From the NCBI RefSeq assembly GCF_006345805.1, contig NW_021829905.1, positions 1 to 31,560 of the forward strand: DNA of 31,560 nucleotides, read 5' to 3'. The first letter of the stretch is position 1; each line of letters starts with the position of its first letter. The stretch comes from Octopus sinensis (taxonomy: Eukaryota). This document shows positions 10,615 to 11,487 of the stretch, piece by piece. A program made the position numbers and the translations under genes. The notes beneath the pieces were generated by a model. That model was not told where the DNA came from and ran no database searches. It saw only the letters and a program-made list of their open reading frames with translations.

Positions 10615-11004
10615 TAAGATAAAACTTATTTAGATGTGGATGCGTGCGTTCTATCATATAATAACAAATTAATAAATAAAACATATGCATATATACATAC
10701 ATATATGTACGTACCTACAGAATGAGAAACGAAAACATAAACACAAAACCAAGGAAATGGACATTTTTATTAACGAAAAAATAGAATACAAGACAACACA
10801 AGGAACAGTCCCCTTCTTCAACCACCTCTGTTTCATCTACCCCGCGTTTCGAAGGTAAAGGCAAGACAGGTCTTCGTTGAAACAGTCCTTCCCGCAAAAG
10901 CAAATTAAATATAATTTGAGATTTTTTGCGGAGGGGTAAAAATGGCAACAAAAACAGGACAGTAGAAACAATACAAAATATAAACAGTAAAAGACAGGAC
11001 AAGG

Positions 11005-11151
11005 AGAATAACAGTAACACGAACATTGAGGGCTGTTAAGCCAGAACGAATATTTTTGCAAATATTGAAAATATAATTTGAAAATATAATGGAAATATTT
11101 TTTGATTCGTTCTGGCTTAACAGCCCTCAATGTTCGTGTTACTGTTATTCT
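11005..11151. repeat. Perfect 47-bp inverted repeat with 53-nt AT-rich spacer
   Basis: 11005-11051 AGAATAACAGTAACACGAACATTGAGGGCTGTTAAGCCAGAACGAAT is the exact reverse complement of 11105-11151. The ORF track shows the same peptide (WLNSPQCSCYCYS) on both strands. Confidence 0.97.
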
Positions 11152-11487
11152 TCTTGTTGCTGCAATTATCATTCCTTGTATTTTCCTCCTCTTCCTCGTC
11201 TTCCCCGTCTTCCTCATCCTCTTCCTCCTCACAACTACCACCACCACTACTGCCATCACCACTGCCACCACTGCCGCCGAATCCGCCGCTAACATCACTA
11301 TTATCATCATCATCCTCATTATCATCATACCACCATCACCACCACCGCCGCCAACACCACCACCACCACTACTACCAACCCCATTAGTGTTAAAGTACTA
11401 CTGCCACTACCACTACCACTACTACTAATATTACTTCCACTACTATTACTACTACTATTACTACTACTACTATTAATGATGCTCTGT

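What the first reader, a model, noticed from the sequence alone, without database searches (positions are those of the whole stretch)
10998..11158. Perfect 47-bp inverted repeat (54-bp stem with G-U pairs) in otherwise decayed DNA
Seen: zero mismatches over 47 bp of non-repetitive sequence, extendable to 10998/11158 with two G-U pairs. The 53-nt AT-rich spacer itself contains a direct repeat (TGAAAATATAAT x2). No other copy in the window and no obvious TSD. Surrounding TE copies are clearly diverged, so this is either very recent (template-switch inverted duplication or young MITE) or selected for pairing. Inference: strong hairpin for endo-siRNA/miRNA production, ADAR editing or cruciform extrusion. 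It is the most striking unexplained structure here.
Basis: partly seen in the sequence, partly recalled or inferred. Interest (0 to 1): 0.7.

Follow-up and report, generated by a model that had tools for sequence, protein, structure and literature searches.

The report
Inverted retroelement junction forming a hairpin
The near-perfect hairpin is real, but its two arms are pieces of one mobile-element family lying head-to-head, most likely laid down when the element inserted, so it is an ordinary by-product of retrotransposition and there is no evidence it is a selected RNA structure.

Summary
The inverted repeat is confirmed: arms 10999-11051 and 11105-11157, 53 nt, one G·T mismatch, 47 bp perfect, 53-nt AT-rich spacer, RNA fold -100 kcal/mol, z = -20.

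It is not a stand-alone structure. The arm is an internal segment of an interspersed non-coding repeat with a unit of about 810 nt. At least 40 other places in this 2.72-Gb genome carry one arm each, at 88-100% identity.

The window holds a 5'-truncated copy on the minus strand, 10615-11051, with its tail in a (TA)n microsatellite. Next come 41 nt of filler and then a 65-nt inverted piece of the same family, 11093-11157. Both arms are essentially the family consensus, so neither extreme youth nor selection for pairing is needed.

The family shows the insertion syndrome described for Penelope-like retroelements: variable 5' truncation, partial tandems, a 41-nt tail extension, (TA)n targets, and inverted family pieces at the 5' end in 5 of 34 other loci. 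Copies sit next to RT plus GIY-YIG elements.

The best reading is a dual-priming or template-switch inversion made at insertion. A MITE is rejected, and membership of a known miRNA family is not supported. Transcription, small RNAs and editing are untested. This is a new member of a known kind, of low interest.

The parts
10575..10614 (.). (AC)n/(AT)n microsatellite at the 3' (tail) side of the repeat copy. This is the presumed target microsatellite.
   Evidence: TRF rows 10575-10611 and 10585-10614. Nearly all other copies of the family end in (TA)n at this side.
10615..10655 (-). 41-nt 3' 'tail' extension of the family (plus-strand reading TAAGATAAAACTTATTTAGATGTGGATGCGTGCGTTCTATC).
   Evidence: It is present at this end in 7 of 30 sampled copies and at the junction between tandem units. 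It matches the 30-40-bp one-sided extension described for Penelope-like insertions (PMC8557442).
10656..11051 (-). 5'-truncated direct copy of the ~810-nt non-coding repeat unit (consensus positions 1-467; sense strand = window minus). It has a 57-nt internal deletion near 10719.
   Evidence: Alignments to 12 and 30 other copies. Outside the arm it has 14 substitutions in 291 nt plus 3 small indels against the consensus.
10999..11051 (+). Left arm of the inverted repeat. It is the 5'-most 53 nt of the direct copy (consensus 415-467).
   Evidence: It is identical to the family consensus and to copies on C27, C18 and C17.
11052..11092 (.). 41-nt AT-rich filler of unknown origin. It includes the tandem 13-mer TTGAAAATATAAT x2 (11065-11090).
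   Evidence: It has no match to the family unit. Its junction with the right arm is unique in the genome at up to 3 mismatches. Tandem repeat.
11093..11157 (+). 65-nt inverted piece of the same family (consensus 479 down to 415; sense strand = window plus). It has no tail and no further family sequence beyond 11157.
   Evidence: 96.9% identity to the unit consensus over 65 nt. 94-95% identity to single copies elsewhere.
11105..11157 (+). Right arm of the inverted repeat.
   Evidence: It has one difference from the consensus (11152 T; G·T with 11004).

Best explanation
The hairpin is the 5' junction of a retroelement insertion.

Shown. A non-coding, non-autonomous repeat with a unit of about 810 nt lies on the minus strand at 10615-11051, with its 3' tail in a (TA)n microsatellite. 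The copy is cut short at consensus position 467. After 41 nt of filler comes a 65-nt piece of the same family in the opposite orientation (consensus 415-479). The 53 nt that the two pieces share form the stem.

Inferred. Both pieces were made in one integration event, by target-primed reverse transcription from both sides of the target. One cDNA was primed at the tail. A second was primed internally near consensus 415 by the other DNA end and ran 65 nt towards the RNA 5' end. The two cDNA ends were then joined with filler. This is the topology of L1 'twin priming'. It also resembles the 'inverted 5'-truncated copy adjacent at the 5' end' that is typical of Penelope-like elements (PLEs).

Inferred more weakly. 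The family's behaviour, its targets and its neighbours suggest that it is moved by PLE-type RT/GIY-YIG machinery, which is abundant and young in this genome.

If the locus is transcribed, any pairing-dependent activity (Dicer or ADAR substrate) would be incidental.
For: 1. The arm is family sequence. At least 40 single-arm places exist at 88-100% identity. The 16-mer arm core occurs 44 times in the genome.
2. Orientation and retroposition. One end of the copies is constant and lies in (TA)n. The other end is truncated at 16 different points (consensus 431-539) in 30 copies sampled without reference to the arm, and 14 copies run further.
3. Partial tandems occur. Copies run through a ~255-nt extension into a second unit in L029, L036, L042, L052 and L053.
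4. A 41-nt one-sided tail extension is present.
5. Inverted family pieces recur at the 5' end of other, independent copies, each with a different breakpoint. L011 has direct 5-477 abutting inverted 770->370, with ATATT microhomology. L043 has direct ..553 + TATT + inverted 553->521. L040 has inverted 598->486. L039 has inverted 155->1 with a tail. L031 has a short inverted piece with a tail. That is 5 of 34 loci. L011 and the window both lack the tail on the inverted piece, which dual priming predicts and independent insertion does not.
6. The right arm carries 12 nt of family sequence that is missing from the adjacent copy, so it was not copied from that copy as it now stands.
7. The published PLE insertion syndrome lists exactly these features, including the (TA)n preference (PMC8557442).
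8. The genome holds at least 149 GIY-YIG hits. One such ORF has RVT_1 plus a C-terminal GIY-YIG domain, and its closest relatives named by a source are from bivalve molluscs.
9. Five of 30 such loci carry a unit-like piece within 1.5 kb downstream. In L078 it is fused directly to the PLE 3' UTR on the same strand.
10. The age of the arms is compatible with the age of the copy.
Against: No target-site duplication could be found. The 41-nt filler has no identified template. The 53-nt overlap of the two pieces is much larger than in human L1 twin priming (median 12 bp; PMC12016303). No hammerhead ribozyme was found in six full units. The abundant PLE family's own 3' end shows no significant similarity to the unit, so the autonomous partner is unproven. 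The adjacency to PLE copies (2 in the same orientation, 3 tail-to-tail) could reflect only a shared (TA)n target. No empty site, allele or orthologue was available, so 'made at insertion' is inferred from topology and recurrence and was not observed.
Confidence: 0.6

Rival explanations
1. A rearrangement at the DNA level after insertion. A replication template switch, or break repair with templated synthesis (for example polymerase-theta-type snap-back), copied about 65 nt of a family copy in reverse orientation next to the truncated element.
For: The stem is almost perfect, with 1 difference in 53 nt. The filler contains a 13-nt tandem duplication and a 13-mer that also occurs at 10907-10919 inside the same copy (D5/D6). 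Patchwork of this kind is typical of repair synthesis. No TSD brackets the whole structure.
Against: The right piece contains consensus 468-479, which the adjacent copy lacks, so the template cannot be the neighbouring DNA as it now stands. The same topology recurs at the 5' ends of independent copies (L011, L043, L040). Fold-backs were not seen at internal positions. The 13-mer match is about what chance gives in AT-rich sequence (my estimate).
Confidence: 0.17
2. Two independent insertions of the family in opposite orientation into the same AT-rich target. A later deletion removed all but the first 65 nt of the right-hand copy.
For: Copies of this family cluster. Tandem or nearby second copies occur in L036, L052, L053 and L006, and tail-to-tail pairs sharing a (TA)n occur in L060, L074 and L058. 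(TA)n tails attract further insertions.
Against: Retroposed copies keep their 3' tail, but the right piece has neither a tail nor consensus 1-414. The deletion would have had to end exactly at the edge of the overlap. L011 shows the same tail-less inverted piece, so the coincidence would have had to happen twice. Only 44 exact arm cores exist in 2.72 Gb, and this is the only head-to-head pair within 400 nt.
Confidence: 0.1
3. A functional hairpin RNA locus (hpRNA or endo-siRNA source, miRNA precursor or ADAR target) kept perfect by selection for pairing.
For: The stem is thermodynamically extreme. Long perfect dsRNA is a substrate for Dicer and ADAR (general knowledge). The divergence of the arms (2/118) is nominally lower than that of the rest of the copy (14/291).
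Against: That difference is not significant (p = 0.17). Both arms equal the family consensus, so nothing beyond ordinary TE youth is needed. There are no compensatory changes. No Rfam family reaches threshold, and the sub-threshold hits are long-hairpin plant MIR models that score on both strands. The window is microsatellite and TE debris with no evident gene. A 53-bp perfect stem is not shaped like an animal miRNA precursor.
Confidence: 0.06
4. An assembly artefact: a fold-back or chimeric long read in an unplaced 31.6-kb contig.
For: The window is a whole unplaced contig. PLE-type tandem and inverted structures are known to trouble assemblies (PMC8557442).
Against: The palindrome is only 53 bp per arm, with different unique sequence on each side. 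Read fold-backs instead mirror kilobases. Analogous junctions lie on chromosome-scale scaffolds (L011 on C8, L043 on C18).
Confidence: 0.04
5. A young MITE whose terminal inverted repeats are the two arms.
For: The shape alone fits: two inverted arms around a short AT-rich core.
Against: The unit occurs once in the genome. The arms continue outward into family sequence on the left only (10656-10998). There is no TSD. The arm is internal to an ~810-nt unit that behaves as a retroelement.
Confidence: 0.01

Closest known systems
Complex tandem/inverted insertions of Penelope-like elements (PLEs), including non-autonomous derivatives (Craig et al. 2021, PMC8557442)
   Same: Strong 5' truncation, partial head-to-tail tandems, an inverted 5'-truncated piece abutting the 5' end, a 30-40-bp one-sided tail extension, insertion into (TA)n microsatellites, and no canonical hammerhead (as in Naiads). 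RT/GIY-YIG elements are abundant in the same genome and are found abutting copies of the family.
   Different: The family encodes nothing, and no autonomous partner sharing its 3' end was identified. The neighbouring PLE has a C-terminal EN (the canonical type, which usually carries hammerheads), not the Naiad arrangement. In the window the inverted piece is only 65 nt, lacks the element's 3' end, and is separated from the direct copy by 41 nt of filler.
L1 5' inversion by twin priming (Ostertag & Kazazian 2001; features summarised in PMC12016303)
   Same: The topology is the same: an inverted cDNA whose junction-proximal end is its most 5' RNA position, next to a 5'-truncated direct cDNA. The two can share sequence.
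   Different: The overlap here is 53 nt (33-113 nt at the other loci of this family) against a median of 12 bp in L1. The tail is (TA)n, not poly(A). No TSD or EN motif was recognised. The machinery is probably not L1.
dsRNA-forming inverted TE pairs (inverted Alu pairs edited by ADAR; Drosophila hpRNA loci giving endo-siRNAs). Named from general knowledge.
   Same: Two inverted copies of one TE segment close together would fold into long perfect dsRNA if transcribed.
   Different: No evidence of transcription, editing or small RNAs. The locus is a single copy in TE and microsatellite debris, with no conservation data.
MITEs / foldback elements
   Same: Inverted arms flanking a short AT-rich core.
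   Different: The structure is not mobile as a unit (one copy), has no TSD, and its arms are not element termini.

Membership tests
PLE-type (Penelope-like) insertion / non-autonomous PLE derivative | Frequent, variable 5' truncation with a constant 3' end | tested here: met
   In 30 copies sampled with a query that excludes the arm, 16 are truncated at different points (consensus 431-539) and 14 run on. The other end is constant and lies in (TA)n.
PLE-type (Penelope-like) insertion / non-autonomous PLE derivative | Partial head-to-tail tandems (pseudo-LTRs) | tested here: met
   L029, L036, L042, L052 and L053 continue through a ~255-nt extension into a second unit. Unit spacing is about 810 nt.
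PLE-type (Penelope-like) insertion / non-autonomous PLE derivative | Inverted 5'-truncated copy immediately adjacent to the 5' end | tested here: met
   The window, plus L011, L043, L040, L039 and L031, which is 5 of 34 other loci.
PLE-type (Penelope-like) insertion / non-autonomous PLE derivative | 30-40-bp 'tail' extension present at one end only | tested here: met
   A 41-nt segment (window 10615-10655) is present in 7 of 30 copies and at tandem junctions.
PLE-type (Penelope-like) insertion / non-autonomous PLE derivative | Insertion bias for microsatellites ((TA)n) | tested here: met
   (TA)n lies at the 3' end of almost all copies and also at the 5' flank of many. The autonomous PLE copies also end in (TA)n.
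PLE-type (Penelope-like) insertion / non-autonomous PLE derivative | Hammerhead ribozyme in the pLTR (canonical PLEs; absent in Naiads) | tested here: not met
   Rfam at E <= 1 on six full units gives no hammerhead, only microsatellite-driven miRNA noise.
PLE-type (Penelope-like) insertion / non-autonomous PLE derivative | An RT + GIY-YIG autonomous partner sharing the 3' end | tested here: inconclusive
   RT + C-terminal GIY-YIG ORFs are abundant. In L078 the PLE 3' UTR is fused to a unit-like 3' part (82% over 451 nt) on the same strand. However, most copies of that PLE end without it, and no significant similarity was found.
Twin-priming 5' inversion (LINE-type TPRT) | An inverted segment directly 5' of a truncated direct segment, with its junction-proximal end being the more 5' RNA position | tested here: met
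   Direct 1-467; inverted 479->415 with 479 nearest the junction.
Twin-priming 5' inversion (LINE-type TPRT) | A single target-site duplication bracketing both segments; poly(A) tail; EN cleavage motif | tested here: not met
   No shared flank word longer than 8 nt. The tail is (TA)n, not poly(A).
MITE | Many copies of the whole unit, terminal inverted repeats at the element ends, and a TSD | tested here: not met
   One copy genome-wide. The left arm continues into 340 nt of family sequence. No TSD.
Known miRNA / small-RNA family (Rfam) | A match to a curated covariance model at its gathering score | tested here: not met
   No hit at gathering thresholds. The best sub-threshold hit scores 56 bits against a gathering score of 211, and hits occur on both strands.
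hpRNA / endo-siRNA or ADAR-edited inverted repeat | Transcription across the hairpin, small RNAs of 21-22 nt, or clustered A-to-I sites | not testable with these tools
   No RNA data are available. Only the fold could be computed.

The most novel reading that the evidence does not exclude
The hairpin, although born as an insertion by-product, is transcribed and processed into endo-siRNAs or heavily A-to-I edited, and so acts as a trans-silencing or dsRNA-sensing source against the few hundred copies of this retroelement family. If the genome is a cephalopod, which is untested, it would be a clean single-locus model of TE-derived dsRNA feeding the editing and RNAi pathways. A second modestly novel point is that the family may be an undescribed hammerhead-less, tandem-forming non-autonomous PLE derivative that targets (TA)n.
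Probability: 0.1. Interest if true: 0.45.

Novelty: new member of a known kind. Interest (0 to 1): 0.2.

Why it matters
The main value is as a caution. A striking perfect hairpin in raw sequence can be the ordinary 5' junction of a retroelement insertion. Copy-number and family-consensus checks settle this quickly. A secondary value is that the locus and its sister loci (L011, L043, L040, L039) are sequence-resolved examples of the tandem/inverted junctions whose mechanism in Penelope-like elements is still unknown. They show internally primed, tail-less inverted pieces with long overlaps (33-113 nt). Any model of that integration pathway has to account for these.

Tried and rejected
1. Arm as a specially conserved segment. 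The first sample showed 98-100% identity in the arm, but those loci had been chosen by arm identity. In a sample chosen with a query that excludes the arm, the arm is not better conserved (8% against 3.6% differences). Rejected as ascertainment bias.

2. C7:107765641-107765717 as a paralogue of the hairpin. It is only a 56-nt family fragment embedded in (TA)n, and its match to the spacer was low complexity.

3. An allelic or haplotig copy, or an empty site. Searches with both flanks found only other repeat families. The junction is unique.

4. A target-site duplication. None longer than 8 nt.

5. A hammerhead ribozyme or retrozyme. None found.

6. Coding capacity of the unit. No ORF of note in six frames.

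7. The idea that the segment just upstream of the arm derives from the PLE 3' end. A 25-nt resemblance was seen by eye, but local alignment scored no better than shuffles. Rejected.

8. The spacer as a patchwork copied from 10900-10930. The 13-mer match is not beyond chance in AT-rich sequence. Left open.

9. Snap-back self-priming of a single cDNA. This fits L043 but not the window or L011, where the inverted piece reaches further 5' than the direct copy.

10. Organism identity. Not established. The PLE protein's closest relatives named by a source are from bivalve molluscs at 45-49% identity; unnamed hits reach 60%. My recollection that the assembly statistics fit an octopus assembly could not be verified.

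Full report
THE OBSERVATION

The repeat finder gives arms 10999-11051 and 11105-11157, 53 nt, 98% complementary, with 53 nt between them. Reading the bases, 11005-11051 pairs perfectly with 11105-11151 (47 bp). 11004/11152 and 10998/11158 are G·T, so the '54-bp stem with two G-U pairs' is correct.

As RNA, the plus strand of 10990-11165 folds at -100.3 kcal/mol. Two hundred dinucleotide shuffles give -30.8 +/- 3.5 (z = -20). The minus strand gives -95.1 (z = -18.5). The spacer contains TTGAAAATATAAT twice, at 11065-11090. The 42-nt arm core has only these two matches in the window, with 0 expected.

The window is the whole of an unplaced contig (C6376) of a 2.72-Gb genome in 13,516 contigs. 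Searching that genome with 10990-11165 gives 82 matches. Apart from the window, each place holds one arm, hit on both strands by the two arms of the query, at 88-100% identity. Three places (C27, C18, C17) are 100% identical over 62 nt. So the arm is a piece of an interspersed repeat.

The claim of 'decayed' surroundings also fails. Window 10010-10244 is 96-98% identical to at least 39 other copies. Window 11483-11860 is 94-95% identical to at least 39 others.

THE REPEAT FAMILY

I aligned 12 loci found with the arm. I then aligned 30 loci found with a 259-nt consensus query that excludes the arm. Allowing for overlap, that is 34 distinct loci besides the window.

- One end of the copies is constant and runs into a (TA)n microsatellite. 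There are two alternative end points 41 nt apart.
- The other end is variable. Of the 30 copies, 16 stop at different positions (consensus 431-539) and 14 continue.
- Copies that continue pass through about 255 nt more and then re-enter the beginning of the unit (L029, L036, L042, L052, L053). The unit is therefore about 810 nt and can form partial head-to-tail tandems.
- It has no ORF of note.

A constant end at a microsatellite together with variable truncation at the other end is the signature of target-primed reverse transcription. That makes the window's minus strand the sense strand.

The exact 16-mer arm core GCTGTTAAGCCAGAAC occurs only 44 times in the genome, two of them being the window's arms. 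I therefore estimate that copies reaching the arm number in the hundreds.

ANATOMY IN THE WINDOW

Reading the plus strand:
- 10575-10614: (AC/AT)n microsatellite.
- 10615-10655: the 41-nt tail extension.
- 10656-11051: consensus 1-467, with a 57-nt internal deletion.
- 11052-11092: 41 nt of AT-rich filler that matches nothing in the unit.
- 11093-11157: consensus 479 down to 415 in reverse complement (96.9% over 65 nt).
- From 11158: unrelated CT- and ACC-rich low-complexity sequence.

The stem is simply the 53 nt (415-467) that the long copy and the short inverted piece have in common. The inverted piece reaches 12 nt further into the family than the long copy does. It has neither the tail nor consensus 1-414.

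AGE AND SELECTION

Outside the arm, the long copy differs from the consensus at 14 of 291 positions, plus three small indels. The left arm differs at 0 of 53. The 65-nt inverted piece differs at 2 of 65.

The comparison 2/118 against 14/291 is not significant (Fisher p = 0.17). One arm-to-arm difference is compatible with a post-insertion divergence of about 1-3% per arm. Both arms are consensus sequence, and there is no compensatory change. Nothing requires extreme youth relative to the surroundings, or selection for pairing.

My first impression that the arm is a specially conserved segment was an ascertainment artefact. It disappears in the sample chosen without the arm.

UNIQUENESS

A head-to-head pair of the arm core within 400 nt exists only here. 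The junction of filler and right arm is unique at up to 3 mismatches. The hairpin as a unit is therefore single-copy. With no TSD and arms that are internal to the unit, this rules out a MITE.

No Rfam family reaches its gathering score. With permissive settings, the hairpin gives only structure-driven hits to long plant MIR models. These are far below threshold and appear on both strands.

RECURRENCE OF INVERTED 5' JUNCTIONS

The other loci show the same kind of junction at other breakpoints.
- L011 (C8): direct 5-477 abuts inverted 770->370 at an ATATT microhomology. The inverted piece again has no tail, and its outer flank is not (TA)n.
- L043 = L004 (C18): direct to 553, then TATT, then inverted 553->521.
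- L040: direct to 702, a 44-nt direct fragment, then inverted 598->486.
- L039: direct 48-451 abuts inverted 155->1 with its own tail.
- L031 = L012: a short inverted piece with a tail follows the 5' end.

That is 5 of 34 loci. In each case the inverted piece sits at the 5' end of a direct copy. In the window, L011 and L043 the junction-proximal end of the inverted piece is at or beyond the 5' end of the direct copy. This is the topology of two cDNAs made from both ends of the target.

Self-priming of one cDNA would fit L043. It cannot fit the window or L011, where the inverted piece extends further 5' than the direct copy. Two independent insertions followed by deletion would have to remove exactly the tail-bearing part of the inverted copy. 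It would have had to do so twice (window and L011).

WHICH MACHINERY

[quoted passage not shown] The family here meets every structural point.

No hammerhead was found in six full units.

The genome contains at least 149 scored GIY-YIG matches, many in long open frames. One ORF (L064) has RVT_1 followed by a C-terminal GIY-YIG domain. Its closest relatives named by a source are from bivalve molluscs. L078's ORF is 93-95% identical to those of L063, L064 and L073.

Five of the 30 GIY-YIG loci carry a unit-like piece (78-82% identity) within 1.5 kb downstream.
- In L078 the PLE 3' UTR is fused directly, on the same strand, to the unit's 3' part (unit-consensus positions 10-449; 82% over 451 nt), which ends in (TA)n.
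- In L068 the two elements are on the same strand but separated by (TA)n.
- In L060, L074 and L058 they lie tail-to-tail.

The PLE's own copies end in ...TTTTTTACAAATA(TA)n. The two elements therefore share a target. I found no significant sequence similarity between the PLE 3' UTR and the unit. So the family behaves like a non-autonomous PLE passenger, but its partner is not proven.

COMPARISON WITH L1 TWIN PRIMING

The topology is the same, and overlap of the two cDNAs is known for L1. In human L1, however, the overlap has a median of 12 bp (PMC12016303). Here it is 53 nt, and it is 33-113 nt at the sister loci. There is also no poly(A) tail and no recognisable TSD. I file the structure as working like twin priming but not as an L1-type event.

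VERDICT

The structure is real and statistically extreme, but it is explained. It is the overlap between a 5'-truncated retroelement copy and a short inverted piece of the same family at its 5' end. It was most likely created in one integration event by dual priming or template switching of a PLE-type reverse transcriptase (confidence about 0.6).

The broader statement, that the arms are two pieces of one TE family and not a dedicated RNA gene, I hold at about 0.95.

Whether the hairpin is transcribed, diced or edited cannot be tested here. If it is, that would be an incidental consequence of the insertion.

The rivals are DNA-level templated repair (0.17), two insertions plus a deletion (0.10), a selected hairpin (0.06), an assembly artefact (0.04) and a MITE (0.01).

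Interest is low. The only mildly new points are the family itself, which is tandem-forming, lacks a hammerhead and targets (TA)n, and the set of resolved inverted junctions with long overlaps.

Noticed in passing
window 10010-10244 and 11483-11860: Two other interspersed repeats flank the locus. One is ~235 nt (96-98% identical to at least 39 copies) and the other is ~380 nt (94-95% identical to at least 39 copies). They look like young SINE-like families. Neither was classified.
   Followed up: partly
window 7408-7794 (-): A 128-aa open frame with Tc1/mariner-type HTH domains (Pfam HTH_23, E = 1.4e-6; weak Sleeping Beauty HTH). It is a DNA-transposase remnant.
   Followed up: partly
window 17000-17467 (-): An open frame with a weak zf-RVT match (24.9 bits, just below the cut-off). 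It is probably the C-terminal remnant of a LINE reverse transcriptase.
   Followed up: partly
window 14000-16400: About 2.4 kb of extremely AT-rich low-complexity sequence (GC 11-25%, strong AT skew). Much of the window consists of microsatellites.
   Followed up: no
L034 = L013 (G000:C9 ~48.1757 Mb), immediately 5' of the truncated family copy: An unrelated ~25-nt-arm palindrome around a (TATG/TA)n core: CTGAAAGAAGCTTAACG...CGTTAGGCTTCTTTCAG. It is another hairpin at a 5' junction of this family.
   Followed up: no
L025/L026 (G000:C7:107765641-107765717): An isolated 56-nt inverted fragment of almost the same segment as the window's right arm (consensus 423-478). It is embedded in (TA)n, about 760 nt from the 5' end of a direct copy. 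This suggests that the segment 415/423-479 is a recurrent internally primed piece.
   Followed up: partly
L063, L064, L073 and many other G000 places: A young RT + C-terminal GIY-YIG (Penelope-like) family. One search lists open frames of 780-883 aa at these places. The ORFs found in the loci are 93-97% identical to one another at the protein or DNA level, and all copies end in (TA)n. It may be recently active.
   Followed up: partly
protein hits P0029, P0043, P0065, P0077, P0086, P0104: Relatives of this eukaryotic retroelement protein are deposited as 'GIY-YIG nuclease family protein' of bivalve-symbiont bacteria (Candidatus Thiodiazotropha, Solemya velum gill symbiont). They are probably host-genome contigs mis-binned into symbiont MAGs.
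   Followed up: no
L078 (G000:C18 ~30.842 Mb): A chimeric copy. The PLE 3' UTR, lacking its last ~12 nt, is joined without (TA)n to an internal position of the non-coding unit (about consensus 390) on the same strand. This is what an RT template jump from one RNA to another would produce.
   Followed up: partly
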